DNA of 64,000 nt. Origin: Sphaerodactylus townsendi (lineage: Eukaryota). Within the stretch, counting starts at the first letter, position 1. Each line of letters begins with the position of its first letter. The notes below the pieces were generated by a model. That model searched no databases. It saw only the letters and a program-made list of their open reading frames with translations, and was not told the origin of the DNA. Of the stretch, positions 15,286 to 34,774 are shown piece after piece. A program made the position numbers and the translations under genes. The stretch spans positions 31,620,001-31,684,000 of the forward strand of contig NC_059438.1 in NCBI RefSeq assembly GCF_021028975.2, in the 5' to 3' direction.

Positions 15286-18200
15286 ATGATGCATTGCCTC
15301 ACACCTCTCCTCCTCCTCTTGTGGTATTGCTCTCAGTACACAGAGGTACTTTTAACCCTTCCTTTCCTGCCACCCCCATTGTCAGTCACCTGTTCAAACC
15401 CTCGACACCGAGTCTATCAGAGGCAGGACAGCAAACACCATGTCTCATGCTTGTGGGATGGGGACATCCAGCTGAAGTATTCAAAAGCTCCTAGACTGAT
15501 TCCAGATATCAATGGGGAAGAGAACCGTCAGCAGCCCCCTCCTCGCTGTCTCTGGTACCGAGACGCCATCTTGGTAAACACCACAAACAACTGGTCAGGT
15601 GAACTGGTGGTGGGCACAGGCTTCGTCAGGCAAGGTCCCCATCCACCTTGGATCTTCACACGTATCACCATGCACTGCGTATCGTCCTTCTGTTATGGGC
15701 CCACCTGTCTTCACCACAACCTGAGCATTGAAATGACCGTGCAGGATGTCCGTCTTTTCCTGCTTTGGCCGCACAACCTTCCCATCCGTGAATGGCAGCC
15801 GGTGCAGTGGGGTTGGTGTGCACGCCTGAAGAGCTCTACCTGGATCTACCACTTCAGGAGCCAAGGAGGAAGTCCTGCAGACCAACACATCCCTGCAAAT
15901 CAGCATAATAGACCAACTGAGTTCGCTGTTTATCCCCGTGCAGAATTGCACCAAGTGTGTGAATCGTATTATAGCTACCATACCACTGTGAAATACCCCC
16001 TGCGTGGATTCTACACGGTGTCACTCCGCATCGAGAAGGAACCTCAGTTGAGTCGAAGCCTGGACTTGTACGTGCAGCCTGCCCTGCTTCACGTCTTTAC
16101 TGCGTCTTCCAGACTGTCCAGCTTCCCCCATAAAACCCTCGGCCTTTCCTGGACCTTCCAACCTCTGACTGCCGGAATAACAGCTTTTGTGTTGGTGGAT
16201 GAACAGGGTCACGGGGACTGGTATCACTCATACAACGCATTGGCTCTGCAAAGGAATTTCTGTGCTGCACCCAAACCACAACATTCCAGGGAGAAAGTGG
16301 TAGCCAGCACCTACTTCCGTACCAACAAAAGGATATCTGGAGAACTGAGAGGCAAACTCCATTTTTCAGGTGACACCCTGATTTCCGCAGCTGGCTATAC
16401 AATGCCAACTCATCTCACCCTCAACCCACAGAAGATAAGGACTGGCACGTACATTTTTAGTAAACAGGGACTCTTCTATTCCACCCAAAAAGGCAGTGTT
16501 GTCCATGCCACCAGTGAGAACACCAGCTCCCACTACATCTTCTACCAGCAGGAGAGTTTCTCCTTCTTGATCATCCTTGAATCTGTCCAGCTGCAATGGT
16601 ATCGGTTCAACATGCATATGTATTTGAACCGCAGGGGGAGTCTATTCAGGTCGTTGGGAGAACAAGGCATAGAAGTTCATGTTTTCAGTGGTCATTCGCC
16701 TGATATAAATTTGGCTTATATTGTGTGGTTTATTCCTGTACAGCATCCTCGGCTGCAGTGTGAGTGGTCCTTCAACCTGCAACTTTTTGATTCAAAGAAC
16801 GACCATCTCCTTGCAAACAAGACTTATTCCTACAAAGACCATGTTCGAAATGCTGCCCACTTTCTCCCCCACTCTCTTCTACCTTTCAGAGCCGCTCTCT
16901 ACACGGGTTTTGTAGCAGAAGTGAATTGCGGAAGCGCTGGAATGGCTCGAGCTGTTTTAAACACTGAAGTCAGCACTCGTGGATCAAAGGTCTTAAAGCC
17001 GACGGTGCCTTGTCAAAAGAGCTACTGTCAGGAAGTGACTGCCATAATCCAGAAACCTGATCCTTCTAACTCTCTCATAAGCTATACAAGACAGTCAACA
17101 ATCACCTTGCAAGCAACTGCAAAGGCCCTGTGTAGGACAAATCTGCATATAGATATAATCTGGGAAATCTCCAGCGTTCATAGTAAAGGCTCATCAAGAG
17201 CGACCAGCAGGATTAGAACAGTCGGAGTCACATTTCATTTGCCTGGAAAACTCTTAAAGCCTGGCCTGTATCATCTTACAATGACCGTGACCGCATATCT
17301 GCCAGCATATAACATAACCATCAGAGAGTCCGATTCAGTTACCATACATGTTGTAGAAAGTGATTTGGTAGCAGTCATAGCTGGAGGCTCTTTCAGGACA
17401 GTCGGTGTTTCTGATCCTTGGACTTTGGATGCCTCTGCTTCCTTTGACCCCGATTCAGCCAACCCCCACGCAGGACTTGTATTTAACTGGCTGTGCTCCA
17501 AACGAAAACCAGACTTTTTAAAGATGAAACTGAGTACAGATGGGAAATGCCGTCCAGGTCAAGAGACTTTGAAATGGACCGATTCCCAGGAACCGGTTCA
17601 AATAGTACAAAGAGAGACACTTCTACCACAGAACACATATTATTTTATTCTGAGAATTACGAAGGGTAGAAGAACTGCAGATGCTTATCAAACAGTTCGG
17701 GTTCTGCCTGGTTCTCTTCCTGTGTTGAATTTCACCTGCGTTCGAAACTGTAGAAGAAACATTATACCAGCTGAAAGATTAACACTGTATGGGAAGTGTT
17801 TAAACTGTGAAGCTAGTCCAACTGTCTATCAGTGGTCTCTTCTTTCATCAAGCTCCAATAAAATACTTTTTGACTGGGATGCCAAAACTTCAACTGGGAG
17901 GTCGATTCCTTACCTAAGCATCAATCCGTTGGTGTTCAACACTATGCCACACAAATCTTACACTCTTAGCCTCACAACAAGCACAAAAGGGAGACAAGAC
18001 GCCACTTATGAGTATTCGTTTTCTATTAATAATCCCCCACGGATTGGGAAATGTACTATTTATCCAAGGGTAGGCACAGTGTTCCTTACAAAATTTAGTG
18101 TCCAGTGTAGTGGATGGGAAGATGAACATGGACCACTGACGTACAAAATCATAGCACATTCTGATGACATGAAAACGAGTCAAATGTTTTTTCCACAGAA

Positions 18201-21200
18201 TAGTCCATTGGGAACAATAGTATATGTAGGTCACCAACGTCAAAGTCTTCCGTGTTTTCTTCCCCTTGGCACACCATCTAAAAAGTATACCCTGATAGTA
18301 TCTGTTCAGGTGTACGATGCCCTTGGAGCATTTTCTCAAGACATTTTACAAGCCACCGTGCACGATTCAAGGAGAAACCAGTCAACTGCTCTTGTTCTCA
18401 GTGGACTTCACAATTTAATCAGCAGATCAAATGCCCCCATGTCAATTTTCTTCGAAACCAAAGATTACTTTAATATAGGTTATTATGTATATATGGTGGC
18501 CTCAGTATTGAACAATATTAGGTCATCACCAGCCATTCGTGGCTCTAAAACTTACTTGCGGGAAACTCTCCTTAACGTGTCTGCAGGGATTCCAATGACT
18601 GAGATTGGGGTAATAAGGCAAGTGATTGCCAGCGTCTGTCAAATCACACAGGAAGTCACAGAAATAAATGGGAAATCTCAGCTTCTCACAGTCAGGAAGT
18701 TCCAAGAAGCCACCAAAGCTCTACAAAGGCAAAAGGCCAAGGATCTGGATTCTAAGGAAACTGAAATCCTTCTCCACGGTATATTTAGGGGGCTATCAAA
18801 TGTGTTAACAGCTGCTCTATTGGACAGTAGGCATGTCAATATAGATTCAGTTAAGGAAACTATTGCTGTTGCAGAGATACTGGCAAACTTAGTATTGCAG
18901 GACAAAGTTCCTGGCGAGTATGAAACTAATTTAGAAGCTAAAGACTGGGCCATTCATCTACGGAAAGATGAGAAGCGGGATATTTCTCAAACGTTTAGAG
19001 AAAGAAAATGTAAGAACTGCTTCTATCCCAAACTGAAGAAGGAAAACGATACTGACTTCCCTGCGGATGCTGTGGTTTCCACCGTTTTGTATGAATTTGT
19101 TGAGAATCCCTTCCCTTGGCTTGTGGATGCAGCAGCTAATCACATGATAGTGATTGGGTTCAAAATGACCGCAGCTAAAGAAAATGGTGACACTTTAGGG
19201 ATCATACCTGAGGTTGTGGAAGTGATGATGGACATAAAAAACAAGGATTCTGACACCTTTGGCCTAACGGTAGGGCCAGATAAAAAATACCATAAGACAA
19301 CAGGTGGTTTTAGTTTTGAAGTGAGAAGAATCTCCACAGACATATTTGTCCAGATTGAGAGTAAAATAAAGGTTACTTTCAATGTCTCTCTCTATCTTGG
19401 GCTCAATGTCAGCAATCCTCCATTGATTTCTTACGTTGCTTACTTTGACAAACCTTCAGTATTAAATGGAAATTATCCCAATATTAGTGACTGTGCAGTT
19501 AAGACTCCTTATGTCCTTTGTTTTCCTCGGTCCTTGCTTTGGTCTTCAGCGGAAGGCAGCAGAGCAGACAAAAGGAACATCTCCATTGTTTTGCAGTCCC
19601 ATCCTTTTGTGAGAGTCCAAACCTCAAAGGTGGTTCGCATTACTGTTTTTACAACAGGGTGTCTAGACTTAGACAGAGTTCAGAACCAGTGGGAAGAAGA
19701 AACATGCACCCTTGGGTCTCAGACCAGCCAGTCCAAGATCCATTGCATCTGCAAATTAAAAGATACTACCATAAGAACCAAACGGCCCAGGTCAACAGGG
19801 ACCTCCAGCACTAGTGTCAGATTTGTTGCTGGTACATTTCAGATCTATCCCAATCCTTTGGATATAACAAAGGTCCTTTTAGCAGAATTTGACACAAATC
19901 CAGTGACATTGTTTACTGTGTTTTTCATCTTTGCAATCTACATCTTTCTGATTATCTGGGCCACAATGAAAGATAGACTTGACATGAAACGAAAAGACAA
20001 AATCCTTGTTTTGCCAGATAATGACCCTTTTCACAGAGTTTGCTATGTGGTCACTGTATACACAGGAAGTCGTGTCGGATCAGGAACCACAGCGGATGTC
20101 TTTATAGAACTGATAGGCCAAAACGCTGTCAGTGATGTACATCGTTTACAACACCCAACTTTTCCAATCCTCTTTCGTGCAGCTGTCAATACCTTTCTCA
20201 TAACCACCAAGAAAGACTTAGGAGACATTTTTTCTCTTCACGTGTGGCACAATAATGGTGGTTCTTCCCCTAACTGGTACCTAAGCCGAGTTAAAGTGCT
20301 CAATGTCAAAACTAAACAGTCCTGGCTGTTCTTGTGTAGAAACTGGTTTGGCCTTGGTAAGGCAGATTGCAAAATAGAAAGGTCATTTCTCGTGACTAAC
20401 CAAGATTTACCATTAAAAAAAATGGATTACTTCTTGATAAAACTTGCCAAAGACTTGGAAGACAGCCATGTGTGGCTCTCCGTCTTCTCTCAAGTTGTCA
20501 CTGGTCCTTTCAGCAGAGTTCAGAGGATATCTTGTTGCTTGGTGATCATGCTTACTAGCCTGTTATTTAACATCATGTTTTTCAGTGGCGAACAGGAAGA
20601 ACAGGTCATTTCAATACAGCTGCGTTATCTGAAATCCATCTACATTGGATTTGTGAGTGCTATGTTTTCTCTCCCTGTGCATTTGACAATCATAATTTTA
20701 TTTAGATATTCACAAGAAAAGCCTTCGGAATATGAGAATGATGAGAATGAGCAAAAACGGTGTTTCCTTTTAGTATCGGAAAGCTCTGAGGATCTCAATT
20801 TAAACTGGAATGCCCGAAGCCCGTCACGACCAAACCTCCGTAACAATTATTCGGGTGAGAAGGACACAGACACGAAGGCAGGAAGGTTAATATGCCGAGT
20901 GTTGAACTTCCTTTTTATAAGGCCAAAGTTTGCATGGTGGTGCAAGTACGTTTCTTGGACACTGGTCTTTTTAATATCTATCATTTCATCTTCTTTCATC
21001 ATCTTATATGGACTGACCTACGGTTACACAACGTCACTGGAATGGTTCATCGCATCCATGACATCCCTTTTTCAGAGTGTGTTTTTGGTTCAAATTTTGA
21101 AGATGGTTCTTTTCTCAGCTATGAGCACCGTAGTTCTCAAATACTGCAAACATATCCCCTGGATAAGCACAGAAAAATATGAACAGATGAAGCTGGAGAA

Positions 21201-22995
21201 AACGACTGTGCTTGGCAAAGACATGAAAAAGCTTCATCATGAACTTGTGCAACTTAGAGCATCCCGGGAATACCGGCCTCTAGAAGAGGACGAAGTCATC
21301 ATTATGAGGAAGAGAACAAGAGCGCAACACCTAGCTTTTGTTTTTGTAAAAGATATTATTTGTCACCTGATCTTTTCATCCTGTGTTTTAAGCATTGCCT
21401 ACTCAGTAGATACCACTACTAGCTTTCGTTACAATCAAGCAATTTATGAGAAATTCTCTGTTAATCTGTCCCAAGTAAATAGGTTGGAGGACGTGTACAC
21501 GTGGACAAGCAATGTCTTCGTGCCACTGATCCACAATGATGATCAACCAACCTATCTTTTAGACACTTGGTCTAAAATTCTTGGGTTGCCCAGAATGAGG
21601 CAAATAAGAGCCTCAAGTGCTAGGAAAACATGCTTCCATTCACACAGCTTCGTAAATAGTTTTCTGGTTAATGAAAGCCACTGCCGTTACAAATACGGAA
21701 AAGATCCAGAAGATGAAACGGATTATATTGGATCATGGACAATCCCCATGAATAAATCCACTTCCAAACACTCCAGCAGTTTTCAAGGGTTTACATTTGA
21801 GTCAGACATTGATCAGTGGGAATATAAGTCTTATGGTATTTTAAACACATATGGCCCCGAGGGGTATAGCTTTTATTTTTTCCCTAGAGAACAGCGACCC
21901 AATACCACAATGAGGCTGGATGATCTTCAAAGAAACGTCTGGCTTGACGAGAGGACCTGGGTCGTTATTTTTGAGCTGACCATTTTCAATGCAGACATAG
22001 ATCAATACTGCAGTATAACAGTCATGTTTGAGACTTCTGACATTGGAATTATTCATGCCAGCTTGTCAACACATACTTACAAACTGTCTGTTTTCCGTCT
22101 TCAAACTAAGTCCCAGATAGTGGCATATGGATTGATGACATACATTCTGATCTTTTACCTAGCCGATGAATTTAATATGTTACGTCAGGAAAGGATAGGC
22201 TACCTAAAAACAACCACCAACTTAATCAATTTTGCAATAAAGACCAGCTGTATATTTTTTATCTTGTTAATTGCACTCAAATTCAAAATGGCTTTTACCT
22301 TGATACAATTTTTTCTCCTGAATCCAGAAAAATTTGTTCCTTTTCATGTGGTTTCTCAAATTGATCAACTCTATAGGATGGTGGCAGGAGTTTTGACCTT
22401 CCTTCTGGTTTTAAAGCCTTATCGCTATTTTAGATTCATGTATAATGTCCGTCTAGCAGAAAAAACCATAGCAGCTGCTTTACCGCTGTTTGTTTCTTTG
22501 TCTGTGCTAACTGGTTTGCTCCTTTTCGCGCACATATCATTTGGATACCTTACATTTGGTGAATATCAATGGGATGATAATGATTCTATGATTCATTCTG
22601 GTGAGACTATTGTTTCATACTGTTTTCACATGATGACACTTAAGGATATTACGTTTTCATCCAATTCATGGATTGGCCTCTTGTTACGAGTTTTATTTAT
22701 TTATGCCATTATCGGTGTTCTTATTCATTTGTGGCAGTCTGTAGTTATCTTTACCTATGCATCGATGAAACAGCCAACCTACGAACTGCACTCTGACGAA
22801 GCAGAAGCAGTAAACTTTGTGGTTCATAAAATCCAAAGTCTATGGTGTCGCATAACCCATCAGACACCGTCCACAAGCAGCACTGGCCCTATGGACACTA
22901 TAATATTTGGAAAAGTGGCAAGAGGAAAGGGTAAGCATCTAGGACTCAAAAGCACCGAAGTTGAAGGCCAGAAAATGGTTTATCTTTCCGTTTAA
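15286..22995 (+). CDS. PKDREJ: PKDREJ-like paralog 1: intronless polycystin-1 family receptor (signal peptide, REJ, GAIN/GPS, PLAT, 11-TM/channel domain), ~2569 aa, divergent copy
   Basis: Uninterrupted 7.7-kb ORF; first ATG at 15286 precedes hydrophobic MMHCLTPLLLLLWYC; REJ motif LDASASFDPD; PLAT YVVTVYTGSRVGSGTTADVFIELIG...WHNNGGSSPNWYLSRVKV; LGLPRMRQIR; C-terminus KMVYLSV; position between TTC38 and CDPF1. Confidence 0.92.
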   Translation: MMHCLTPLLLLLWYCSQYTEVLLTLPFLPPPLSVTCSNPRHRVYQRQDSKHHVSCLWDGDIQLKYSKAPRLIPDINGEENRQQPPPRCLWYRDAILVNTTNNWSGELVVGTGFVRQGPHPPWIFTRITMHCVSSFCYGPTCLHHNLSIEMTVQDVRLFLLWPHNLPIREWQPVQWGWCARLKSSTWIYHFRSQGGSPADQHIPANQHNRPTEFAVYPRAELHQVCESYYSYHTTVKYPLRGFYTVSLRIEKEPQLSRSLDLYVQPALLHVFTASSRLSSFPHKTLGLSWTFQPLTAGITAFVLVDEQGHGDWYHSYNALALQRNFCAAPKPQHSREKVVASTYFRTNKRISGELRGKLHFSGDTLISAAGYTMPTHLTLNPQKIRTGTYIFSKQGLFYSTQKGSVVHATSENTSSHYIFYQQESFSFLIILESVQLQWYRFNMHMYLNRRGSLFRSLGEQGIEVHVFSGHSPDINLAYIVWFIPVQHPRLQCEWSFNLQLFDSKNDHLLANKTYSYKDHVRNAAHFLPHSLLPFRAALYTGFVAEVNCGSAGMARAVLNTEVSTRGSKVLKPTVPCQKSYCQEVTAIIQKPDPSNSLISYTRQSTITLQATAKALCRTNLHIDIIWEISSVHSKGSSRATSRIRTVGVTFHLPGKLLKPGLYHLTMTVTAYLPAYNITIRESDSVTIHVVESDLVAVIAGGSFRTVGVSDPWTLDASASFDPDSANPHAGLVFNWLCSKRKPDFLKMKLSTDGKCRPGQETLKWTDSQEPVQIVQRETLLPQNTYYFILRITKGRRTADAYQTVRVLPGSLPVLNFTCVRNCRRNIIPAERLTLYGKCLNCEASPTVYQWSLLSSSSNKILFDWDAKTSTGRSIPYLSINPLVFNTMPHKSYTLSLTTSTKGRQDATYEYSFSINNPPRIGKCTIYPRVGTVFLTKFSVQCSGWEDEHGPLTYKIIAHSDDMKTSQMFFPQNSPLGTIVYVGHQRQSLPCFLPLGTPSKKYTLIVSVQVYDALGAFSQDILQATVHDSRRNQSTALVLSGLHNLISRSNAPMSIFFETKDYFNIGYYVYMVASVLNNIRSSPAIRGSKTYLRETLLNVSAGIPMTEIGVIRQVIASVCQITQEVTEINGKSQLLTVRKFQEATKALQRQKAKDLDSKETEILLHGIFRGLSNVLTAALLDSRHVNIDSVKETIAVAEILANLVLQDKVPGEYETNLEAKDWAIHLRKDEKRDISQTFRERKCKNCFYPKLKKENDTDFPADAVVSTVLYEFVENPFPWLVDAAANHMIVIGFKMTAAKENGDTLGIIPEVVEVMMDIKNKDSDTFGLTVGPDKKYHKTTGGFSFEVRRISTDIFVQIESKIKVTFNVSLYLGLNVSNPPLISYVAYFDKPSVLNGNYPNISDCAVKTPYVLCFPRSLLWSSAEGSRADKRNISIVLQSHPFVRVQTSKVVRITVFTTGCLDLDRVQNQWEEETCTLGSQTSQSKIHCICKLKDTTIRTKRPRSTGTSSTSVRFVAGTFQIYPNPLDITKVLLAEFDTNPVTLFTVFFIFAIYIFLIIWATMKDRLDMKRKDKILVLPDNDPFHRVCYVVTVYTGSRVGSGTTADVFIELIGQNAVSDVHRLQHPTFPILFRAAVNTFLITTKKDLGDIFSLHVWHNNGGSSPNWYLSRVKVLNVKTKQSWLFLCRNWFGLGKADCKIERSFLVTNQDLPLKKMDYFLIKLAKDLEDSHVWLSVFSQVVTGPFSRVQRISCCLVIMLTSLLFNIMFFSGEQEEQVISIQLRYLKSIYIGFVSAMFSLPVHLTIIILFRYSQEKPSEYENDENEQKRCFLLVSESSEDLNLNWNARSPSRPNLRNNYSGEKDTDTKAGRLICRVLNFLFIRPKFAWWCKYVSWTLVFLISIISSSFIILYGLTYGYTTSLEWFIASMTSLFQSVFLVQILKMVLFSAMSTVVLKYCKHIPWISTEKYEQMKLEKTTVLGKDMKKLHHELVQLRASREYRPLEEDEVIIMRKRTRAQHLAFVFVKDIICHLIFSSCVLSIAYSVDTTTSFRYNQAIYEKFSVNLSQVNRLEDVYTWTSNVFVPLIHNDDQPTYLLDTWSKILGLPRMRQIRASSARKTCFHSHSFVNSFLVNESHCRYKYGKDPEDETDYIGSWTIPMNKSTSKHSSSFQGFTFESDIDQWEYKSYGILNTYGPEGYSFYFFPREQRPNTTMRLDDLQRNVWLDERTWVVIFELTIFNADIDQYCSITVMFETSDIGIIHASLSTHTYKLSVFRLQTKSQIVAYGLMTYILIFYLADEFNMLRQERIGYLKTTTNLINFAIKTSCIFFILLIALKFKMAFTLIQFFLLNPEKFVPFHVVSQIDQLYRMVAGVLTFLLVLKPYRYFRFMYNVRLAEKTIAAALPLFVSLSVLTGLLLFAHISFGYLTFGEYQWDDNDSMIHSGETIVSYCFHMMTLKDITFSSNSWIGLLLRVLFIYAIIGVLIHLWQSVVIFTYASMKQPTYELHSDEAEAVNFVVHKIQSLWCRITHQTPSTSSTGPMDTIIFGKVARGKGKHLGLKSTEVEGQKMVYLSV

Positions 22996-23016
22996 GAAAG
23001 ATGTTGCTAAAACTTG

Positions 23017-23022
23017 AATAAA
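23017..23022 (+). other. Probable polyadenylation signal of PKDREJ-like 1
   Basis: AATAAA 21 nt after the stop codon, followed by a T-rich stretch. Confidence 0.55.
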
Positions 23023-24104: not shown

Positions 24105-24368
24105 CAAGCTAATTTTATCTCTTCATATAAGGAAATGAAGCAACCTGTCTATGAAGAATCTTTTAATGAAAATGAAGCACTATACTATCTAGGTGAAAAG
24201 TTCTACAGCTCATGTGTTTTTTGCTGCCAATAAGTGAACTGCCCATAACAGAAACGGACGTTTTATGACTTTTTATTTTATGGCAAGCCGGTGAAATTTC
24301 AAATGGAATAACTATGACCTCAAAAACACTAAAATAGTGATCAAAAAGTATGTTTATGTTTTACTTGA
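24105..24368 (+). pseudogene. Decayed 3'-terminal fragment of a third PKDREJ copy
   Basis: Translates QANFISSYKEMKQPVYEESFNENEALYYLGEKF, then a stop and frameshifts, then FLFYGKP and NYDLKNTKIVIKKYVYVLL; aligns with PKDREJ C-tail QAVIMSSYEDMKQPVYEEPSEEAEVVKFLCHKI...FLYGH...HLGLKARKINGRKMVYLVV. Confidence 0.85.
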
Positions 24369-24483: not shown

Positions 24484-24689
24484 NNNNNNNNNNNNNNNNN
24501 NNNNNNNNNNNNNNNNNNNNNNNNNNNNNNNNNNNNNNNNNNNNNNNNNNNNNNNNNNNNNNNNNNNNNNNNNNNNNNNNNNNNNNNNNNNNNNNNNNNN
24601 NNNNNNNNNNNNNNNNNNNNNNNNNNNNNNNNNNNNNNNNNNNNNNNNNNNNNNNNNNNNNNNNNNNNNNNNNNNNNNNNNNNNNNNNN
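24484..24689. other. Assembly gap (further gaps at 25202-25348 and 39359-39539)
   Basis: Runs of N. Confidence 1.
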
Positions 24690-25370: not shown

Positions 25371-25405
<35 letters not shown>

Positions 25406-26890: not shown

Positions 26891-29800
26891 ATGCACCGTG
26901 TGTCGTGCACCCTCCTCCTCTTCTGGTACTGGCGCTGCTTCCAGTACCCAGAGGCTACGGCCCCTTGTTTACTGCCATCACCATTGCTGGTCATCTGCTC
27001 AGACCCACAAACCCATTTCAGACAGCAGCAAAACTCCACCGTTAGGACTTCATGCCTATGGGACGGAGACCCCAAGCTCTACTGCCTGAGAGTCTCGGGA
27101 TTTGTGTCAAGAATTAGAAGGGGATGCACAGATTTTCCATCTTCTGATTGTAGCTGGTGCTGGAGATCAGCCTGGATGCGTAGTACGATTCTCCGGCAGT
27201 GTCGGTGGCTGCTGGGCTTCTGCCTCAAAACACATCCGCCTTGGGATTCCAGCCGGATCCCCATACAGGGTGCATCAATTTCCTGCAGAGTGCCCACGTG
27301 CCTTCACCATGACCTGAGCACTGAAGTGTTTGGCCAGGACATCCAGCTTCTCCTGCTCCAGCCACTCACATGTCCTGCCTCTAAGCAAAAACCAGTGCTG
27401 CTTGGCTGGTGTGCACGCCTCAACAGTTCAAGATGGCCTTCCCACCACAGTGGTCAAGGAGGTGAACCTGTGGTCTTGCTCCTCCCTGCTAGCTATCGTC
27501 CAGATTCTCCACACCATCATAATGGTAAATTGTACAACACGTGCATCTCCTACTTCAGCTACCACCCGAAAGTTCATGATACCCACCAAGGGCTACATGT
27601 TGCTTCCCTCCACACTGATCATGGACCTCAAGACAGCCTTAGTCTGGACTTGCTGGTGGAACCCATCCTGGTACACCTTTTTAGCATCCATTCCAAATGG
27701 CTCGCTATCACTCATAGCACCATCAATCTCTTTTGGAGCCTCTTACGTGTAAGCCCCAGAAAAATGGCCTATAGGCTGTTAGACGTTGAGAGTGGATTCT
27801 GGTCTACCTCCTACAGTCCATATGTTCTGAAGAACAATTTCTCTGTTGGCCGTATCCCACAGCATTCCAGGAAGAAGGTTGTAGCCAGCATATATTTTTG
27901 CACTGAAGAAGGGGAAACTGGGGAGCTGAGAGGGGAACTTGGGTACTCTAATGCCACCTTAAGTCTAACATCTAAGAGTGAGCCACCATTTCATTTCACT
28001 CTCAACACAAGCAAAATCAAGATGGGCACCTACCTTTTCAGTCCAGCACGGGGACTGTACTATTCCACCCAAGAAGGAAAGACTCCTGATGATCCCTCCA
28101 GCATGCACTACTTTTTCTACCAGCAGCAAACCCTCTCGTATCTATTCACCATCGAGTTTCACCAATGGCAATGGTACAGGTTGAGCATGCACACGTACCT
28201 TAACAGGAAGGGAATCCCTTTACAAAAGTTTTTCCCAGAGAAAAATATAGAAGTTCATGTTTTCAACAGCGGTCCTTCTTTTTTACAAAGTTTGATCTAT
28301 ATTGTGTGGTTTGTTCCTATACAACACCCACTATTGCAGAATGAGTGGACCTTTGAGTTGCAATTGTTTGATTCAAGAGGGGACTTCCTCCTACGAAACA
28401 ATACTTATACGTATAGGGATCGCATCAAAAATGCGGCCCATTTTATTCCTCACTTTGTTTTACCTTTCAATCCTGCCTTGTATGCGGGTTTTGTAGCACC
28501 AGTGAACTGCACTAAAAGACTGATAAGGGCTGTTTTAAAAACTACAATCAACCCTTACGCTTCAAAGGAAAGCAACTTCACAGTTCCTTGCCTTCAAAAC
28601 GATTGTTTTATTAAACATGTTAAAATACGTAAACCTGATTCTTCTAACAGTGTCTTACAGTACAGTAAAGGGACCTCGTTTACTCTGTCTGCTGACATAC
28701 AGATGAATTGCCCAAGTTCTAAACACAGAGGCAATATTTGGAAAATCTATAAAGTCTCAGATGTGAAGGCTACCCCTGACTGGTCAAAACCTTTTGATCC
28801 ACCTGGCCTTGGAAGGCAAGATCTTGTTATGTTAGATGTTCCTGGTTCTACTTTCGATGATGGTTTGTATCTCTTTAATTTCACAGTTAAATTAACCACA
28901 ACAGGTACTTCAGAGACTGTGGAGGATTCTGATTCGGTGTTTGTCCAGGTTGGGTCAGGTAGTCTTGTGGCCATCATTGCTGGAGGCAATTTTCGGACAG
29001 TTGGATTTTCTGATCAATGGACTCTAGATGGATCTTATTCCTATGATACCGAGGCAGCCCTTCCTTCTGAAAGGATCACCTTTACTTGGTACTGCACCAA
29101 ACAAAAATCAGACTACGCATCCATGACGCTAAGTTTGAAGGGAAAATGTCACCCAGATCAAGTGAATTTGAAATGGACAACATCATCTAATGAAGTCCAA
29201 ACAGTGCAGCCGGAAACCCTTCAAGCAAATATTATTTATTATTTTTGTCTCGCGGTTCAAAAAGGTGGCAGGATAGCTCGGGCTGAACAAACAGTTCATG
29301 TGCAGCCAAGCTCTGTTCCAATTCTGAACATCACATGTATTGAAAATTGTGGTCCGTCAGTCACACCCAGAGAAAGGTTGTGTCTGTCTGGCAAGTGCAT
29401 GAACTGTGGGAAATCAATCAGACTGCTCTATCATTGGTCACTTCTCACGGCAAATTTCACTGAAATAAATTTTGATTGGGATGCCAAGACTACAACTGGA
29501 CGGTCTAGTCCATACATGTGTATCAAAACTCTGAGTTTTCTAAATATGACAGAGGCAACATACGTGCTTACTCTAAAAGCAAGCATCTGGAGATACCAGT
29601 CATCTGTTTATAACTATTCATTTTTTGTAAATTCTCCTCCTCAGATCGGCAAGTGCTTGCTTAAGCCTACCACAGGAAGTGTGTTTCTAACAAAATTCAT
29701 TGTTCACTGTAGCGGGTTTAGAGATAAACATTTGCCTCTTACATATAAAGTCAAAGCAGCGTCCCACCCGTTAACAATTACTAAAGTGTTTTCTATAGAA

Positions 29801-32800
29801 AACAACACCCCGGGGACAATTGTGTATTCTGGTTATCGGTCTAAAATCCCACCATCTTTTTTACCCATTGGCATCCCCTCTAAGCAATATACCTTGACAA
29901 TACACATTGAGGCATACGATGCTCTTGGAGCATTTTCTCAAGTAACCTTACAGGCAAAGGTACACGGTCCATTCATAGGTAAGCAAACAGATTATATTCT
30001 AAATGAATTACATGGTTTATCCAGTGGGCCAAAAGCTCCAATTTCATATTTTCTTGAAAGTGGGGATTATTTTAATGCAGGATATTTTGTCTACATGGTG
30101 GCTTCTGTTTTGAACAGTATTGAAGCTTTGCAACAATTTCACTCCTCTAAGACCGAGCTTCGGGAAATCCTTCTTAACAAGTCTGCAGAAATCCCTACAA
30201 CTGGCATACTGGAACTAACCCAAATGGTTTCAGGAATTTCTCAAATAACGCAGGAAGCCGCAGAAGTAAACAGGAAGACACAACTCCTTGCCCTCAGAAA
30301 ACTCAAAGAACTGAGTAAAGAACTGAAAAGGTACAGAGATAAAAACTTGGGTTCTAGGGACATAGAAGTTCTCAGCACTGGTATTTTTGAAGGGCTGTCC
30401 AATATCCTGAAAGCATCTCTGCTAGACTACAGAAATGTCCATAAAAATGGGGTGACAGACACTCTCTCCATCACTGAGATATTAGCAGAAATAATCTTAC
30501 AAGGTAAAGTCCCTGGAGAAAATGAAACTGTTATGGAAACCAGTGACTGGACCATTAGATTCAGAAAAGACGCCAAGTGGAGTGTTCCTGGTACTTTCCC
30601 TCACAGAGGGGTCTGTAAGAATTGCTTTTATTCCAAAATCAATCAAGAGGGTCATGACGAATTGCCAGCAGATGCTGAAGTCTCCACTGTTGTTTTTGCA
30701 TTTCATAAAAACCCTTTCCCTTGGTTACCCTTTTCAAAAGATATCAGCACAACGGTGACTGGATTCAAGATGACGGGAACCAGATCTGATGGCAACATAG
30801 TGGGGGTCATACCTGACGTAGCTGAAATGATCATGACCAGAAAAGATGAGGGCCCTGCCATCTTTGAGCTGAATATTGGACACAACAGAAAACTTCACAA
30901 AAAAACTGGAGGCTTTAGTTTTGAAGTACATAGAAATTCCAAAGAAGTTTTCATCCAGATTGTAACTGAACGGAAGCTTACTTTCCAGCTATTTGTTTAT
31001 CTAGGCCTCAACATCAACCATCCTCCCATCGCATCTTTCAGTGGTTCCCATAACAAACATACAGCAACAACAGGAAAGAAGTCTAAGGGCCATGGCTGTG
31101 CAGCCCAAGATTCTTCTATATTTTGCCTTTCCCGGTCTTTGCTGAAATCCATGTTCCAAGGTAACAGTGCTGAAAAATGGAACATGTCTATTATTTTACA
31201 ATCAGATCCTTTCTTGTGGGACCCAAGAGTTCAGGTCGTTGGTGTCAGACTTTTTACCGCTGACTGCTTATACCTAGATGGAATCCAGAGTCAATGGAAA
31301 GAAGGTGTCTGCGACCTTGGCCCTCAGACGAGCTGGGAGAAATTACATTGCATCTGCAAAGCCAAACAACGTACTCCAAGAACAGCAAGTCCTCGACCGA
31401 GAAGAACTTCCAAAAATGACATGAAATTTTTGGCGGGCAAAGTCAGCGTCCACCCTGATTTGAAGGAGGTCCCGTTGGTACGCGTCAACAACAACCCAGT
31501 GACAACTGTGACGGTCCTTTTCATTTTTGTCGTATACATTTGCTTGGCTGTTTGGACCATGAGGAAAGACAGGGCTGATGTAAAAAGCGTAGACCATATC
31601 ATAGTCTTATCAGACAATGACCCCTATGACCAAGTATGTTACTTTGTCACAATATACACAGGAAGCCGCTTTGGAGCAGGAACCACAGCCGATGTTTTCA
31701 TCCAACTGATAGGCCACAGAGATGCCAGCGACATACATTGTTTGAGACACCCCGAATACCCAGTTCTTGTCCGTGGAGCAGTCAACACTTTTCTCCTGAC
31801 TAGCAAGAACGACCTTGGAGATATTTATTCCTTCCGTGCGTGGCACAATCATGGAGGTTCATCTCCTAACTGGTTCTTGAGTAGAGTCAAAGTGCAAAAC
31901 GTATTCACCAAACAATCTTGGAAGTTCATATGCCGAAAATGGTTTGCGCTCAATAAGGATGATGGTCTAATAGAAAGGTCGTTTGTTGCCACTCACCCCA
32001 CCACACCTTTAAGCAAAATGGATTTCTTCTGGATAAATCTTGCCTGTGAGTTAGCAGAGACCCACCTATGGCTTTCTGTTTTCGCTCACATCAGCACCAG
32101 TTCTTTGAAAAGGCTCCACAGGTTGTCTTCTTGCTTGGCGATGCTGTTGTGCACCCTACTTTTCAATATCATCTTCTTCAGTGCTAACAAGGATGAGCTA
32201 GTGGCTTCTCAACAGCCGTTGTATTTGAGGTCTCTACTGACTGGAATTCATAGCGCTTTCATTTTCTTCCCTCTACAGATATTGATAACCGTCTTGTTCA
32301 AGTATTCTCAGCAGAAGCCTTTGCAACAGGGCCCGTTTAACACTCAGCATCAAGGACGTTCTGCTTTCATGTCTAGAAATCTTAGGAACTGGAAGGAGCG
32401 TCTGCAGAAATGGTACCTTGCTGAAACCGCTTCAAAAGGTTTAGGCGATAGTTTCCACAAGAGCCTTTCTAGAACTCCAGATTCATACGGTTTGGAACAG
32501 TTGAAAAGAAAAAGCTGGGGGCAGGCAGCAAAGAAACAGAGTAACTGTACTGTTTCTGAGGGGGATGCAAATATAATTGCAACGGAAGAGGACATGGTTC
32601 ATGATGCCCAAGCCCCCAACAATTTTAATAACAGACATGAGAAGAAAGACCCATTTCCTCAGGTAACACCACTAAATAGTCCCATTGTGCTCTCTAATAA
32701 AAACCCACAAATAATAATCCCCTGGTGGTATGCATATGTCTTGTGGACGCTGGTCTTGGTCACTTCGACGGTGTCATCGTTTTTTATCATATTTTACGGC

Positions 32801-34774
32801 CTGTCGTATGACTATGAAACATCTTTTGAGTGGCTTATAGCCTCGAGCGTTTCATTTTGCGAGAGCGTGTTTTTGCTTCAAACCTTGAACGTTGCTTTCT
32901 TTTCAGCCTTGAGGACACTCTATCCAAAGTATTGTGATAATATCCCATGGTCAAAACGAGAAACCTACTTAGAGATTAAACTGGACAATAAAACTATGGA
33001 TGCCGATGAGATGCGCGAGTTACATTATGAGCTGGTCCGTCTTCGAGGCACCAAACAATACCAGCCCTTGGAAGAGGACGAAGTTGCACTTTTAAAGAAA
33101 AAGCAGAAGGTTGAACAACAGGCTTTTGTGTTCATAAAGGGTATCATATGTCACTTTGTCTTTTTAATTCTTATTTTAAGTATCGCCTACTCAATGGAAA
33201 ACACTGCTAGTTTTTACTACAATCAAGACATTCATAACAAATTCTCTCAGGGGCTCTCAGATATAAGCAAGCCAGAGCACATTTACAGTTGGCTGAAGAA
33301 TGTATTTCTACACTTGATCCACAACAAGAACTACCCATCTTATCTTTCAAAGTCCTGGTCCAAAATCCTGGGGTTGCCCAGAATGCGACAAATAAGAGCA
33401 ACGAATACGTCAAAGGATTGCTTTCATCCACGCAGTTTGGTAAATTTGTTTGTGATTAGTAACAGTCATTGTCTTCACCATTATGGACATGACCCAGAAG
33501 ATCAACGAGATTACCATGGGTCATGGACAAATTCTGCCAATGAATCCATTTTCAACCCTTTCAGCAATTTTTCAGGCTACACATACTATTCAGTCCCTGA
33601 ACAATGGAAATATACTTCATATGGAACACTACATGCTTATGGAGCAGGAGGATATACTTTTCATTTCCACCCAGAAGAACAACAGTCCAATTCATCAAGA
33701 AGAGTTGCTTTTTTGAAACAGAGAGGCTGGTTGGATGAAAATACATGGGCATTAATAGTTGAGCTGACAGCTTTTAATCCAGATGCAGATTTATTTTGCA
33801 GCATCTCGGTTGTTTTTGAGATGTCTGACTTAGGCCCTGTTAACACAAGCTTGTCAATCCATTCATACAAACTCCCACTTTTCAAGCAGCTAAGTAAGAC
33901 ACAAAAATTCGTGTTTGTCACTGTTGCCTATATACTCATATTTTATATCGCCGACGAAATTTGCGTGGTGCAACAACAGCGACTAAGATACGTCCGAAAT
34001 GTTTCTAACTTAATTAACTTTGGGATAAAGACAGTTTGTCTCTTTTATCTTTTGAACCATTCCTTCAAGTTCAAGTTGGCTTCCAGCTTAATACAGCTTT
34101 ATTTACTTCATCCAAAAGAATTCATTCCATTCCATAAAGTTTCTCACATCGATCAGACAATAAGGGTCGCTTTAGGTTTTTTGATCTTTCTTATCATTTT
34201 GAAAACGCTGCGATATTCTCGGTTCTTTTATGATGTGCGATTGGCTCAACGCTCTATCTTAGCAGCCCTCCCTGGAATTTGCTCCATGGCTCTTGTGGTG
34301 GCAGTATATTTCTTTGTCTACATGGCATTTGGCTACCTGGTATTTGGCCAGTATGAATGGAACTACAATACTATGATTCATTCCGCTCAAACAGTATTCT
34401 CTTACTGTGTTTCAGCTTTTAAAGACACTGCCTTTACATCCAATAGGATACTAGGAAGCCTCTATTTGTCTTCATTTATGATGGTCATGATTTGTGTGTT
34501 GATCAATTTATTTCAAGCTGTGATTATGTCTTCCTATGAAGACATGAAACAACCCGTCTATGAAGAGCCTTCTGAAGAAGCAGAAGTGGTCAAGTTTCTG
34601 TGTCACAAGATCCGCAAGATATGGTTTTTGATAAGGTGTAAAACGCCACCTGAACATGATGCCGAGCTTTTCATTCGATTTCTGTATGGGCATTCAGAAA
34701 GGAGAAACTCGCGTCACCTAGGACTCAAAGCCAGGAAAATAAATGGCCGGAAAATGGTTTATCTTGTTGTTTGA
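26891..34774 (+). CDS. PKDREJ: PKDREJ paralog 2: intronless polycystin family receptor for egg jelly, ~2627 aa, conserved (ortholog-like) copy
   Basis: Uninterrupted 7.9-kb ORF; ATG at 26891 before MHRVSCTLLLFWYW; same domain order; C-terminal channel region LKTLRYSRFFYDVRLAQR...FGYLVFGQYEWNY...QTVFSYCVSAF...MKQPVYEEPS...KMVYLVV is close to recalled mammalian PKDREJ. Confidence 0.95.
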   Translation: MHRVSCTLLLFWYWRCFQYPEATAPCLLPSPLLVICSDPQTHFRQQQNSTVRTSCLWDGDPKLYCLRVSGFVSRIRRGCTDFPSSDCSWCWRSAWMRSTILRQCRWLLGFCLKTHPPWDSSRIPIQGASISCRVPTCLHHDLSTEVFGQDIQLLLLQPLTCPASKQKPVLLGWCARLNSSRWPSHHSGQGGEPVVLLLPASYRPDSPHHHNGKLYNTCISYFSYHPKVHDTHQGLHVASLHTDHGPQDSLSLDLLVEPILVHLFSIHSKWLAITHSTINLFWSLLRVSPRKMAYRLLDVESGFWSTSYSPYVLKNNFSVGRIPQHSRKKVVASIYFCTEEGETGELRGELGYSNATLSLTSKSEPPFHFTLNTSKIKMGTYLFSPARGLYYSTQEGKTPDDPSSMHYFFYQQQTLSYLFTIEFHQWQWYRLSMHTYLNRKGIPLQKFFPEKNIEVHVFNSGPSFLQSLIYIVWFVPIQHPLLQNEWTFELQLFDSRGDFLLRNNTYTYRDRIKNAAHFIPHFVLPFNPALYAGFVAPVNCTKRLIRAVLKTTINPYASKESNFTVPCLQNDCFIKHVKIRKPDSSNSVLQYSKGTSFTLSADIQMNCPSSKHRGNIWKIYKVSDVKATPDWSKPFDPPGLGRQDLVMLDVPGSTFDDGLYLFNFTVKLTTTGTSETVEDSDSVFVQVGSGSLVAIIAGGNFRTVGFSDQWTLDGSYSYDTEAALPSERITFTWYCTKQKSDYASMTLSLKGKCHPDQVNLKWTTSSNEVQTVQPETLQANIIYYFCLAVQKGGRIARAEQTVHVQPSSVPILNITCIENCGPSVTPRERLCLSGKCMNCGKSIRLLYHWSLLTANFTEINFDWDAKTTTGRSSPYMCIKTLSFLNMTEATYVLTLKASIWRYQSSVYNYSFFVNSPPQIGKCLLKPTTGSVFLTKFIVHCSGFRDKHLPLTYKVKAASHPLTITKVFSIENNTPGTIVYSGYRSKIPPSFLPIGIPSKQYTLTIHIEAYDALGAFSQVTLQAKVHGPFIGKQTDYILNELHGLSSGPKAPISYFLESGDYFNAGYFVYMVASVLNSIEALQQFHSSKTELREILLNKSAEIPTTGILELTQMVSGISQITQEAAEVNRKTQLLALRKLKELSKELKRYRDKNLGSRDIEVLSTGIFEGLSNILKASLLDYRNVHKNGVTDTLSITEILAEIILQGKVPGENETVMETSDWTIRFRKDAKWSVPGTFPHRGVCKNCFYSKINQEGHDELPADAEVSTVVFAFHKNPFPWLPFSKDISTTVTGFKMTGTRSDGNIVGVIPDVAEMIMTRKDEGPAIFELNIGHNRKLHKKTGGFSFEVHRNSKEVFIQIVTERKLTFQLFVYLGLNINHPPIASFSGSHNKHTATTGKKSKGHGCAAQDSSIFCLSRSLLKSMFQGNSAEKWNMSIILQSDPFLWDPRVQVVGVRLFTADCLYLDGIQSQWKEGVCDLGPQTSWEKLHCICKAKQRTPRTASPRPRRTSKNDMKFLAGKVSVHPDLKEVPLVRVNNNPVTTVTVLFIFVVYICLAVWTMRKDRADVKSVDHIIVLSDNDPYDQVCYFVTIYTGSRFGAGTTADVFIQLIGHRDASDIHCLRHPEYPVLVRGAVNTFLLTSKNDLGDIYSFRAWHNHGGSSPNWFLSRVKVQNVFTKQSWKFICRKWFALNKDDGLIERSFVATHPTTPLSKMDFFWINLACELAETHLWLSVFAHISTSSLKRLHRLSSCLAMLLCTLLFNIIFFSANKDELVASQQPLYLRSLLTGIHSAFIFFPLQILITVLFKYSQQKPLQQGPFNTQHQGRSAFMSRNLRNWKERLQKWYLAETASKGLGDSFHKSLSRTPDSYGLEQLKRKSWGQAAKKQSNCTVSEGDANIIATEEDMVHDAQAPNNFNNRHEKKDPFPQVTPLNSPIVLSNKNPQIIIPWWYAYVLWTLVLVTSTVSSFFIIFYGLSYDYETSFEWLIASSVSFCESVFLLQTLNVAFFSALRTLYPKYCDNIPWSKRETYLEIKLDNKTMDADEMRELHYELVRLRGTKQYQPLEEDEVALLKKKQKVEQQAFVFIKGIICHFVFLILILSIAYSMENTASFYYNQDIHNKFSQGLSDISKPEHIYSWLKNVFLHLIHNKNYPSYLSKSWSKILGLPRMRQIRATNTSKDCFHPRSLVNLFVISNSHCLHHYGHDPEDQRDYHGSWTNSANESIFNPFSNFSGYTYYSVPEQWKYTSYGTLHAYGAGGYTFHFHPEEQQSNSSRRVAFLKQRGWLDENTWALIVELTAFNPDADLFCSISVVFEMSDLGPVNTSLSIHSYKLPLFKQLSKTQKFVFVTVAYILIFYIADEICVVQQQRLRYVRNVSNLINFGIKTVCLFYLLNHSFKFKLASSLIQLYLLHPKEFIPFHKVSHIDQTIRVALGFLIFLIILKTLRYSRFFYDVRLAQRSILAALPGICSMALVVAVYFFVYMAFGYLVFGQYEWNYNTMIHSAQTVFSYCVSAFKDTAFTSNRILGSLYLSSFMMVMICVLINLFQAVIMSSYEDMKQPVYEEPSEEAEVVKFLCHKIRKIWFLIRCKTPPEHDAELFIRFLYGHSERRNSRHLGLKARKINGRKMVYLVV

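What the first reader, a model, noticed from the sequence alone, without database searches (positions are those of the whole stretch)
15286..34774. Tandem pair of intact, deeply diverged intronless PKDREJ genes where mammals have one
Seen: two collinear, stop-free ORFs of 7.7 and 7.9 kb with the same REJ-GAIN-PLAT-11TM architecture. Neither carries a TE insertion although the flanks are full of them, and they differ extensively at the protein level, so this is not a haplotype or assembly duplicate. Known: mammalian PKDREJ is a single, intronless, testis/sperm-expressed, fast-evolving gene between TTC38 and CDPF1. Inference: an old duplication retained under selection, possibly a two-receptor polycystin system for sperm-egg-coat or oviduct signalling in squamates.
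Basis: partly seen in the sequence, partly recalled or inferred. Interest (0 to 1): 0.8.

Follow-up and report, generated by a model that had tools for sequence, protein, structure and literature searches.

The report
Two tandem PKDREJ genes in a gecko
This gecko carries two intact, selected copies of the sperm receptor-channel gene PKDREJ side by side, the remains of a three-copy squamate cluster that is already published and annotated; what is new here is that only one copy has kept the ancestral channel pore.

Summary
Two same-strand, stop-free, single-exon ORFs (15286-22995, 2569 aa; 26891-34774, 2627 aa) carry REJ, PLAT, polycystin and PKD-channel domains and are 46% identical. Both assembly gaps lie in the spacer, not in an ORF. 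The interpretation (old duplicate kept under selection) is supported:
- Both copies have orthologues across squamates.
- dN/dS is about 0.3 for each.
- RNA-seq reads of a close relative cover copy 1 up to an AATAAA signal 22 nt past its stop.

It is not new. Karin et al. 2020 (PMC7038749) report three tandem PKDREJ duplicates in squamates, with PKDREJ_B absent in gekkotans, and NCBI annotates PKDREJ plus PKDREJ-like in this and many other squamate genomes. Copy 2 is their PKDREJ_A and copy 1 their PKDREJ_C.

Added here:
- Both duplications fall on the squamate stem, before geckos split off (AU tests).
- A roughly 200-bp relic at 24105-24311 is probably the lost middle copy.
- In S5-pore-S6, copy 2 type has omega 0.02-0.03 and 88% identity to turtle, kiwi and caecilian. 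Copy 1 type has omega about 0.3 and 48% identity. The ectodomains are equally diverged.

Copy 2 expression and the tissue of expression were not tested. The scan's earlier notes on this gene are all on this same window.

The parts
15286..22995 (+). PKDREJ copy 1 (PKDREJ_C of Karin et al.; 'PKDREJ-like' in NCBI), 2569 aa, single exon
   Evidence: Intact ORF. Pfam REJ, PLAT, Polycystin_dom, PKD_channel. Falls in the copy 1-type clade with Euleptes, Paroedura, Eublepharis, Tiliqua, Podarcis, Elgaria, Pogona, Sceloporus and Vipera. dN/dS 0.27-0.31. RNA reads of a relative cover 18484-~23083 with no splice joints.
23017..23022 (+). AATAAA polyadenylation signal of copy 1
   Evidence: The motif lies 22 nt after the stop. 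RNA-seq depth falls to zero after the 22884-23083 bin.
24105..24311 (+). Relic of a PKDREJ C-terminal tail with three in-frame stops, probably the 3' end of the lost middle paralogue (PKDREJ_B of Karin et al.)
   Evidence: tblastn E about 1e-6 to middle-type proteins of Phrynocephalus and Pogona over 64 aa, about 3e-5 to A-type over 32 aa, and 3e-4 to 8e-3 or weaker to copy 1-type. Identity 0.33 / 0.30 / 0.28 to middle / A / copy 1 type. It ends early like the middle-type proteins of the two agamids. It sits between the two genes, where the middle copy lies in Rhineura. Confirmed by a DNA contig with no differences.
24484..24689 (.). Assembly gap in the spacer
   Evidence: N run. Outside both ORFs.
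25202..25348 (.). Assembly gap in the spacer
   Evidence: N run. Outside both ORFs.
26891..34774 (+). PKDREJ copy 2 (PKDREJ_A of Karin et al.; the conservative copy), 2627 aa, single exon
   Evidence: Intact ORF. Pfam as for copy 1 plus Ion_trans. 82% identical to Euleptes PKDREJ. Falls in clade A. dN/dS 0.24-0.33 overall and 0.02-0.03 in S5-pore-S6.
42249..44774 (+). Start of the downstream gene CDPF1
   Evidence: A called gene in this genome's record whose 127-aa product hits PF10170 C6_DPF (locus position 25359 maps to window 42249). Same neighbour in Paroedura.
7580..9491 (-). Exon-like blocks of the upstream TPR gene (TTC38-like)
   Evidence: Collinear tblastx blocks with the Paroedura and Eublepharis regions, where a 466-aa minus-strand gene with faint TPR hits is called. 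Open minus-strand frames at 9363-9491 and 7580-7693. The name TTC38 rests on my memory of the human protein and on size and position. It was not tested (Atlas busy).

Best explanation
The region holds two of the three members of the squamate PKDREJ tandem cluster. The ancestral order, read in Rhineura, is TPR gene (TTC38-like) on the opposite strand, then the copy 1-type gene, the middle gene, and the copy 2-type gene; in the two geckos read (this window and Paroedura) CDPF1 follows the copy 2-type gene. Two duplications on the squamate stem, after the split from turtles and birds and before geckos branched off, turned the single amniote PKDREJ into three co-orthologues. Geckos then lost the middle gene, and a ~200-bp stub of its 3' end probably survives at 24105-24311. 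Both remaining genes are functional protein-coding genes under purifying selection. Inferred mechanism: both are polycystin-1-type 11-TM receptor proteins of sperm, with a large REJ ectodomain as sensor, a PLAT domain on the first cytoplasmic loop, and a TRPP-like six-helix channel module. Such proteins presumably assemble with a PKD2-family subunit, as PKD1/PKD2 and PKD1L3/PKD2L1 do. Copy 2 keeps the ancestral pore almost unchanged and is the likely conducting or gating subunit. Copy 1 keeps the ectodomain, PLAT and TOP domains at the usual constraint but has lost the special constraint on S5-pore-S6 and the C-tail. It most likely acts as a sensor or partner subunit with altered or no conduction of its own. 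Shown: structure, orthology, timing, selection, transcription of copy 1, and the pore asymmetry. Inferred: sperm location, partner subunits, and functional consequence.
For: The ORFs are intact and share one domain set. They are 46% identical.

Gene trees under LG+G4 (51 proteins) and LG+C20 PMSF (34 proteins) agree. All squamate PKDREJs form one clade sister to turtles plus birds. Inside it are three clades: A, copy 1 type (including four geckos), and middle type (no gecko). All have support of 100.

AU tests reject 'middle copy arose after the gecko split' (delta lnL 378, p 6e-43). They also reject 'duplication older than the squamate/turtle-bird split' (delta lnL 168, p 2e-63).

Gene order in Rhineura on CM057612.1 is TPR gene(-), copy 1 type, middle, A. 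In Eublepharis, Paroedura and this genome it is TPR gene(-), copy 1 type, A; CDPF1 then follows A in Paroedura and this genome.

Long ORFs are intact in all seven related genes read. dN/dS is 0.27-0.31 and 0.24-0.33.

In S5-pore-S6, omega is 0.02-0.03 (bootstrap 0-0.07) in copy 2 type against 0.29-0.35 (0.14-0.57) in copy 1 type. Mean pairwise identity among squamates is 0.95, 0.53 and 0.70 for A, copy 1 type and middle type. Identity to two turtles, kiwi and a caecilian is 0.88, 0.48 and 0.53. In the ectodomain all three stand at 0.46-0.51.

RNA-seq run X7, from a species about 2% diverged, covers copy 1 at depth ~5-30 with 6% of the run read. Coverage stops about 90 nt after the stop codon, next to AATAAA. 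Two other RNA samples show almost nothing. The relative has an in-frame 3-nt deletion, and its fixed differences are 18 synonymous to 6 non-synonymous.

Literature: three tandem duplicates in squamates, PKDREJ_B absent in gekkotans, and transcripts of all RELEC loci found in a crested-gecko transcriptome (PMC7038749). The closest solved structures are PKD1, PKD1L3, PKD2L1 and PKD2.
Against: Expression of copy 2 was not tested here (one read-laying run only). The tissue of the positive RNA sample is coded, so 'sperm/testis' is carried over from mammalian PKDREJ. No tuatara, dibamid or crocodilian protein was among the listed hits, so 'squamate stem' could be 'lepidosaur stem'. Early gene conversion between tandem copies could mimic a squamate-specific origin. 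The AU test under the mixture model did not finish, and the completed one uses LG+F+G4, which can over-reject. Omega of 0.3 in the copy 1 pore is still well below 1, so a working but re-tuned pore is not excluded. The relic is short and its clade assignment is weak (0.33 vs 0.30 vs 0.28 identity).
Confidence: 0.85

Rival explanations
1. Copy 1 is a decaying or unexpressed duplicate, in effect a young pseudogene that merely has not yet acquired a stop.
For: Its channel module is much less conserved than that of copy 2, and it gives no Pfam Ion_trans hit.
Against: A 7.7-kb frame is open in four species from geckos to an amphisbaenian. dN/dS is 0.27-0.31 in every pair and 0.11-0.16 in TM1+PLAT. 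It is transcribed to a proper poly(A) signal in a relative, which carries an in-frame indel and 18 synonymous to 6 non-synonymous differences.
Confidence: 0.03
2. The pair is a gecko-specific or recent duplication, or an assembly or haplotype artefact.
For: Two assembly gaps lie between the genes.
Against: Protein identity is 46%. Each copy has its own orthologues across squamates. The same tandem pair is present in gap-free Paroedura and Eublepharis loci. DNA contigs of an independent run confirm the 3' part of copy 1 and the spacer up to the gap.
Confidence: 0.01
3. The duplicates are older than squamates (amniote or sauropsid age) and were lost elsewhere. The squamate-only clade is then an effect of gene conversion or rate artefacts.
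For: Copy 1 is as far from copy 2 (46%) as copy 2 is from birds (46-48%). Tandem genes can undergo conversion. Tuatara and crocodilians were not sampled here.
Against: Squamate monophyly has support 100 under two models, and the alternative is rejected by the AU test. Turtles, most birds, mammals and amphibians each appear with one type only in the hit lists. Karin et al. list PKDREJ_B and PKDREJ_C as 'not present' in human, chicken, painted turtle, crocodile and Xenopus.
Confidence: 0.07
4. Copy 1 still forms a working pore that has been re-tuned (new selectivity or gating) under diversifying selection, rather than a pore that has lost its role.
For: Omega in S5-pore-S6 is 0.3, not 1. The hydrophobic helices are kept. 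A two-residue insertion in the pore loop is present in all four gecko copy 1 proteins.
Against: Only 11 of 101 S5-pore-S6 columns are invariant among ten copy 1-type proteins, against 89 of 101 in A. A re-tuned pore would be expected to settle on a new conserved sequence.
Confidence: 0.3

Closest known systems
Squamate PKDREJ_A / PKDREJ_B / PKDREJ_C tandem duplicates (Karin et al. 2020, Mol Biol Evol 37:904, PMC7038749)
   Same: This is the same locus and the same genes. Copy 2 is PKDREJ_A, the one they equate with the human, chicken, turtle and crocodile gene. Copy 1 is PKDREJ_C by elimination. The missing middle gene is PKDREJ_B, which they report as absent in gekkotans and in an anguid. Elgaria, another anguid, also showed only two types here.
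   Different: That paper uses the genes as phylogenomic markers and gives no gene order, timing test, selection analysis by domain, or function. By the tree, A, B and C are all co-orthologues of the single amniote gene, and A is simply the conservative one.
Mammalian PKDREJ (single, intronless, sperm-head polycystin-1 family protein)
   Same: Domain set, single coding exon, position next to CDPF1, and an elevated but sub-neutral dN/dS. A paper on Gekko japonicus gives omega 0.25 for PKDREJ among sauropsids (PMC10776941).
   Different: Mammals have one copy. Therian proteins (~2250 aa) lack the N-terminal ~430 residues that both gecko copies share with turtle, bird, amphibian and platypus proteins.
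PKD1/PKD2 and PKD1L3/PKD2L1 heteromeric channels (PDB 6a70, 7d7e)
   Same: These are the best solved matches over PLAT and the channel module. A 1:3 complex in which the polycystin-1-type subunit contributes an atypical pore helix set is the working model for both gecko proteins.
   Different: No partner, stoichiometry or current is known for any PKDREJ paralogue here. Resemblance is by sequence only, at E 1e-37 to 1e-12.
Sea urchin REJ family (10 SpREJ genes, PMC1934368)
   Same: Another case where the sperm REJ/polycystin-1 family expanded by duplication (title and abstract seen).
   Different: An independent, much older expansion with varied architectures. Not read in detail here.

Membership tests
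PKDREJ (polycystin-1 family receptor for egg jelly) | REJ domain in the ectodomain | tested here: met
   PF02010 at E 2.7e-90 (copy 1) and 5.7e-96 (copy 2).
PKDREJ (polycystin-1 family receptor for egg jelly) | GPS/GAIN region before the first TM helix | tested here: inconclusive
   No Pfam GPS hit at E 0.01 or better. The C..W..C..C-x-C pattern is present, but the H-L-T/S cleavage triad is absent in both copies. It is also absent from every PKDREJ aligned, including turtle, bird, platypus, monkey and amphibians.
PKDREJ (polycystin-1 family receptor for egg jelly) | PLAT domain after TM1 | tested here: met
   PF01477 at residues 1587-1693 and 1584-1690. This is the most constrained part of copy 1 (omega 0.11-0.16).
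PKDREJ (polycystin-1 family receptor for egg jelly) | 11 TM helices ending in a polycystin (TOP) domain and a TRPP-like channel module | tested here: met
   PF20519 and PF08016 in both copies. Matches PKD1L3, PKD2L1 and PKD2 chains. Hydropathy shows 9-10 strong segments, so the exact count of 11 was not established.
PKDREJ (polycystin-1 family receptor for egg jelly) | Single coding exon | tested here: met
   Uninterrupted ORFs. RNA reads show no joints over the last 4.5 kb of copy 1. The 5' part of copy 1 and all of copy 2 are judged from the ORF only.
PKDREJ (polycystin-1 family receptor for egg jelly) | Orthology to named PKDREJ genes and conserved neighbours (TTC38, CDPF1) | tested here: met
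   Both copies nest inside the PKDREJ tree, rooted on amphibians. The C6_DPF gene is downstream. A 466-aa TPR gene is upstream on the opposite strand; its name TTC38 was not verified.
PKDREJ (polycystin-1 family receptor for egg jelly) | Testis or sperm expression | not testable with these tools
   Copy 1 is transcribed in one of three RNA samples of a relative, but sample identities are coded.
Squamate PKDREJ_C (copy 1) and PKDREJ_A (copy 2) sensu Karin et al. 2020 | Three squamate paralogue clades, with the one absent in geckos being PKDREJ_B | tested here: met
   Three clades with support 100. The clade without geckos contains the Anolis carolinensis UniProt entry G1KQX6 (P0024). Equating it with the Ensembl gene that Karin et al. 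list for A/B is my assumption, and the assignment of the labels A and C is by elimination.

The most novel reading that the evidence does not exclude
After the squamate-stem triplication only the CDPF1-proximal copy kept the ancestral ion-conducting pore. The other two became pore-free (or pore-rewired) sensor subunits that share the conserved ectodomain architecture. Squamate sperm would then carry a modular receptor set: one conducting PKDREJ plus one or two alternative sensing PKDREJs. Such a set might be tied to long-term sperm storage and sperm competition. Geckos would run the minimal two-part version.
Probability: 0.3. Interest if true: 0.55.

Novelty: already known. Interest (0 to 1): 0.3.

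Why it matters
PKDREJ is one of the few candidate sperm receptor-channels in vertebrates, and its function is still poorly understood even in mouse. Squamates offer a natural experiment: three old co-orthologues, or two in geckos, that share the sensor part but differ sharply in the pore. This separates 'sensor' from 'channel' constraints within a single gene family. It also points to clear experiments on which copy conducts and which only senses. The existence of the paralogues themselves is already published and annotated, so the value lies in the domain-specific asymmetry, not in the pair.

Tried and rejected
- The AU test inside treekit under the C20 mixture model did not finish in three runs. 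I replaced it with iqtree2 LG+F+G4 (after a thread-number error).
- The protein Atlas was tried three times to name the upstream exons as TTC38. One attempt failed on my wrong frame and two because the machine was busy. The name stays unverified.
- I looked for more of the third copy in the spacer and in the Eublepharis and Paroedura spacers. Only the 24105-24311 piece was found, and nothing in the other two geckos.
- I first guessed that a conserved Asp in the pore loop was the selectivity-filter residue. The HMMER alignment to PKD2L1 places the LGD filter two residues earlier, opposite V-S-A in copy 2, so I make no claim about filter residues.
- I considered that the relic might be the displaced original tail of copy 1. 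I rejected this because copy 1 has its own version of that segment.
For that reason one stretch could not cover both genes, and copy 2 expression is untested.
- The third word search and the large representative search were not used, because the family was not in doubt.
Full report
**1. Observation.**
The window holds two long open frames on the + strand. They run 15244..22995 and 26846..34774, with first ATGs at 15286 and 26891. The proteins are 2569 and 2627 aa with no internal stop.

The N runs are at 24484-24689, 25202-25348 and 39359-39539. The two flagged by the scan's program lie in the 3.9-kb spacer between the stop of the first gene and the start of the second. Neither ORF touches a gap, so frame continuity across a gap does not arise. 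Only the true length and content of the spacer are uncertain.

Pfam finds REJ, PLAT, Polycystin_dom and PKD_channel in both proteins, and Ion_trans only in the second. They are 46% identical. The best solved relatives are polycystin-1, PKD1L3, PKD2L1 and polycystin-2.

**2. What organism, and is the pair annotated?**
The word search with copy 2 returned the window's own protein from a 48.6-Mb record. The next best hits were geckos: Euleptes europaea 82%, Paroedura picta 72% and Eublepharis macularius 75%. The record is GCA_021028975.2, CM037627.2, and the window corresponds to about 31,620,001-31,684,000. From memory only, this is the Sphaerodactylus townsendi assembly. The tree position next to the gecko Euleptes (a sphaerodactylid, by my knowledge) fits that.

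Both genes are called in that record, with products of 2568 and 2627 aa. NCBI names a 'polycystin family receptor for egg jelly' and one or two '-like' genes on the same chromosome in many squamates. These include Rhineura, Eublepharis, Paroedura, Elgaria, Tiliqua, Podarcis, Zootoca, Pogona, Phrynocephalus, Sceloporus, Anolis and Vipera.

**3. Gene tree and timing.**
I built a tree of 51 PKDREJ proteins rooted on amphibians (LG+G4) and a 34-protein tree under LG+C20 PMSF. They give the same picture.
- All squamate proteins form one clade (support 100), sister to turtles plus birds.
- Inside it are three clades, each with support 100.
- Clade A contains window copy 2.
- The 'copy 1-type' clade contains window copy 1 and three other geckos. 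It also holds a skink, Rhineura, Podarcis, Elgaria, Pogona, Sceloporus, Phrynosoma and Vipera.
- The 'middle-type' clade contains Rhineura, Zootoca, Pogona, Phrynocephalus and Anolis, with no gecko.
- Copy 1 type and middle type are sisters.

AU tests under LG+F+G4 reject two alternatives. The first is that the middle type arose after geckos split off (delta lnL 378, p 6e-43). The second is that the duplication predates the squamate/turtle-bird split (delta lnL 168, p 2e-63). The mixture-model version of the test did not finish.

So two duplications occurred on the squamate stem. It could be the lepidosaur stem, because tuatara was not sampled. Geckos lost one copy later.

**4. Gene order.**
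On Rhineura floridana CM057612.1 the order is: a 480-aa TPR gene on the opposite strand, the copy 1-type gene, the middle-type gene, then the A-type gene, the three PKDREJ genes all on one strand. In Eublepharis and Paroedura it is the 466-aa TPR gene, copy 1 type, A type. Paroedura, and this window's genome, then have a gene with a C6_DPF domain, which is CDPF1. In the window it starts near 42249.

The window's upstream 15 kb is collinear with the Paroedura and Eublepharis TPR-gene regions. It has open minus-strand exon-like frames at 9363-9491 and 7580-7693. These recall the N-terminus of human TTC38, but that is memory only and I could not verify the name.

**5. Literature.**
Karin et al. 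[quoted passage not shown] Their supplement lists PKDREJ_A in human, chicken, painted turtle, Anolis, crocodile and Xenopus. It lists PKDREJ_B and PKDREJ_C as 'not present' outside Anolis. They also report transcripts of all their loci in a crested-gecko transcriptome.

Hence copy 2 is their PKDREJ_A and the middle type is their PKDREJ_B. Copy 1 is their PKDREJ_C, by elimination.

A Gekko japonicus genome paper reports omega 0.25 for PKDREJ, the highest among TRP genes (PMC10776941). I found no functional work on the paralogues.

**6. Selection.**
All seven related genes that I read as DNA are intact single frames of 2557-2666 codons. One, the Eublepharis A-type gene, is cut by the end of the locus at 1692 codons. 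Nei-Gojobori dN/dS between window, Paroedura, Eublepharis and Rhineura is 0.27-0.31 for copy 1 type and 0.24-0.33 for copy 2 type. Neither is near 1.

By region, the two are alike except in the channel module, where omega is 0.06-0.08 for copy 2 type against 0.21-0.27 for copy 1 type. The contrast is sharpest in S5-pore-S6, as the table shows.

| Measure in S5-pore-S6 | Copy 2 type (A) | Copy 1 type | Middle type |
|---|---|---|---|
| Omega (bootstrap 95%) | 0.02-0.03 (0-0.07) | 0.29-0.35 (0.14-0.57) | not computed |
| Mean pairwise identity among squamates | 0.95 | 0.53 | 0.70 |
| Invariant columns of 101 | 89 | 11 | 49 |
| Identity to two turtles, kiwi and a caecilian | 0.88 | 0.48 | 0.53 |

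The TOP domain is equally conserved in all three (0.68-0.70). In the N-terminal, REJ and post-REJ regions all three stand at 0.46-0.51 identity to the outgroups.

So the asymmetry is specific to the pore module and the C-tail. It is shared by both derived paralogues, so it probably began on their common stem.

**7. Expression.**
The run search found DNA runs that hold the gene and three RNA-seq runs of a species sharing 54% of the sampled 31-letter words, which I take as about 2% divergence. I laid 18484-24483, a stretch with no N.
- X1 is DNA. Its contig depth is flat at about 79 across gene and spacer. It agrees with the assembly except at 20094 and 21462, both synonymous, and in a cluster of small differences at 23125-23192.
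- RNA run X7 covers copy 1 continuously from 18484 to the 22884-23083 bin, at depth about 5-30 with only 6% of the run read. It shows nothing unique beyond that point.
- An AATAAA lies at 23017, 22 nt past the stop.
- No splice joints were seen in the RNA.
- RNA runs X8 and X9, from other samples, show essentially no unique reads.
- The relative carries an in-frame 3-nt deletion at 22580. Of the 24 best-supported fixed differences, 18 are synonymous and 6 non-synonymous.

Copy 1 is thus a transcribed, sample-restricted mRNA. The tissue is not known to me. Copy 2 was not tested because only one laying call is allowed.

**8. The relic.**
At 24105-24311 one frame reads a PKDREJ post-S6 tail with three stops.
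- tblastn E values are about 1e-6 to middle-type proteins over 64 aa and about 3e-5 to A-type over 32 aa. They are 3e-4 to 8e-3 or weaker to copy 1 type.
- Identity is 0.33, 0.30 and 0.28 to middle, A and copy 1 type. In the distal half it is 0.22, 0.10 and 0.15.
- It shares a double Tyr and a Lys-x-Tyr with middle-type proteins. It also ends a few residues after Gly-Lys-Pro, as the middle-type proteins of the two agamids (Pogona, Phrynocephalus) do, while A and copy 1 types run on for about 20 more residues.
- It lies where the middle gene lies in Rhineura.

I take it as the probable 3' stub of the lost middle copy, at about 60%. The rest was replaced by high-copy repeats, with word depths of thousands to 170,000 at 23284-23683, 23884-24083 and 24284-24483. 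Paroedura and Eublepharis keep no such piece.

**9. Mechanism.**
Shown: two intact, selected, polycystin-1-type genes, one of them transcribed, and one with an almost frozen pore.

Inferred from the family (PKD1/PKD2 and PKD1L3/PKD2L1 structures, mouse PKDREJ on the sperm head): both are sperm-surface receptor subunits that pair with a PKD2-family channel. Copy 2 contributes a conserved pore helix set. Copy 1 keeps the sensor, PLAT and TOP parts but has a free-running pore region. It therefore probably senses or scaffolds rather than conducts. The rival reading, a re-tuned pore, is not excluded because omega there is 0.3, not 1.

**10. Verdict.**
The claim of novelty is not: the paralogues are published and annotated, and the gecko pair is the reduced form of a squamate triplet. 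The pore-specific asymmetry, the transcript evidence and the relic are modest additions. The scan's earlier notes on this gene are all on this same window, and a word search found nothing elsewhere.

Noticed in passing
window 15286-16596 and 26891-28180: The N-terminal ~430 residues of both copies are not a squamate extension. They align with turtle, stork, caecilian, salamander and platypus PKDREJ (E 1e-17 to 1e-128) but gave no hit in three therian proteins. The short therian N-terminus is therefore the derived state, or a gene-model artefact.
   Followed up: partly
window ~19690-19860 (copy 1) and ~31300-31470 (copy 2): The GPS-like region has the Cys/Trp pattern but no H-L-T/S triad. Instead a variable, basic-rich linker of about 20 residues follows C-x-C. 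This holds for all three squamate clades and for the turtle, bird, mammal and amphibian PKDREJ aligned, so it is family-wide, not a peculiarity of copy 1.
   Followed up: partly
window ~22560-22580 (copy 1 pore loop): All four gecko copy 1-type proteins carry a two-residue insertion in the pore loop (after S-Y-C-x) that no other PKDREJ in the alignment has.
   Followed up: no
window 23125-23192: The DNA contig of run X1 differs from the assembly by a cluster of substitutions and small indels just downstream of copy 1, while matching perfectly elsewhere. This is either a second haplotype or a local polishing problem.
   Followed up: no
window 23284-23683, 23884-24083, 24284-24483: Very high-copy repeats in the spacer (summed word depth 2,500 to 174,000 against about 79 for unique DNA). 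RNA reads from all three RNA runs also pile up at 23884-24083, so a transcribed repeat family sits there.
   Followed up: no
window 12000-14000: A G+C-rich block (0.55 against about 0.42 around it) with long overlapping open frames on both strands at 12274-13160. It lies between the TPR gene and copy 1 and could be a CpG island or a repeat.
   Followed up: no
P0076 (Vipera latastei, 4393 aa); P0128 and P0130 (Lagopus muta): The viper 'uncharacterized protein' is long enough to be a fused model of two tandem PKDREJ genes. The ptarmigan has two PKDREJ-like entries on one chromosome, which may be isoforms or a separate bird duplication.
   Followed up: no
L002 (Rhineura, 9986-17731): The Rhineura copy 1-type gene is annotated as a 2135-aa product, but the locus holds an uninterrupted frame of 2582 codons, so the public model is probably too short.
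   Followed up: partly
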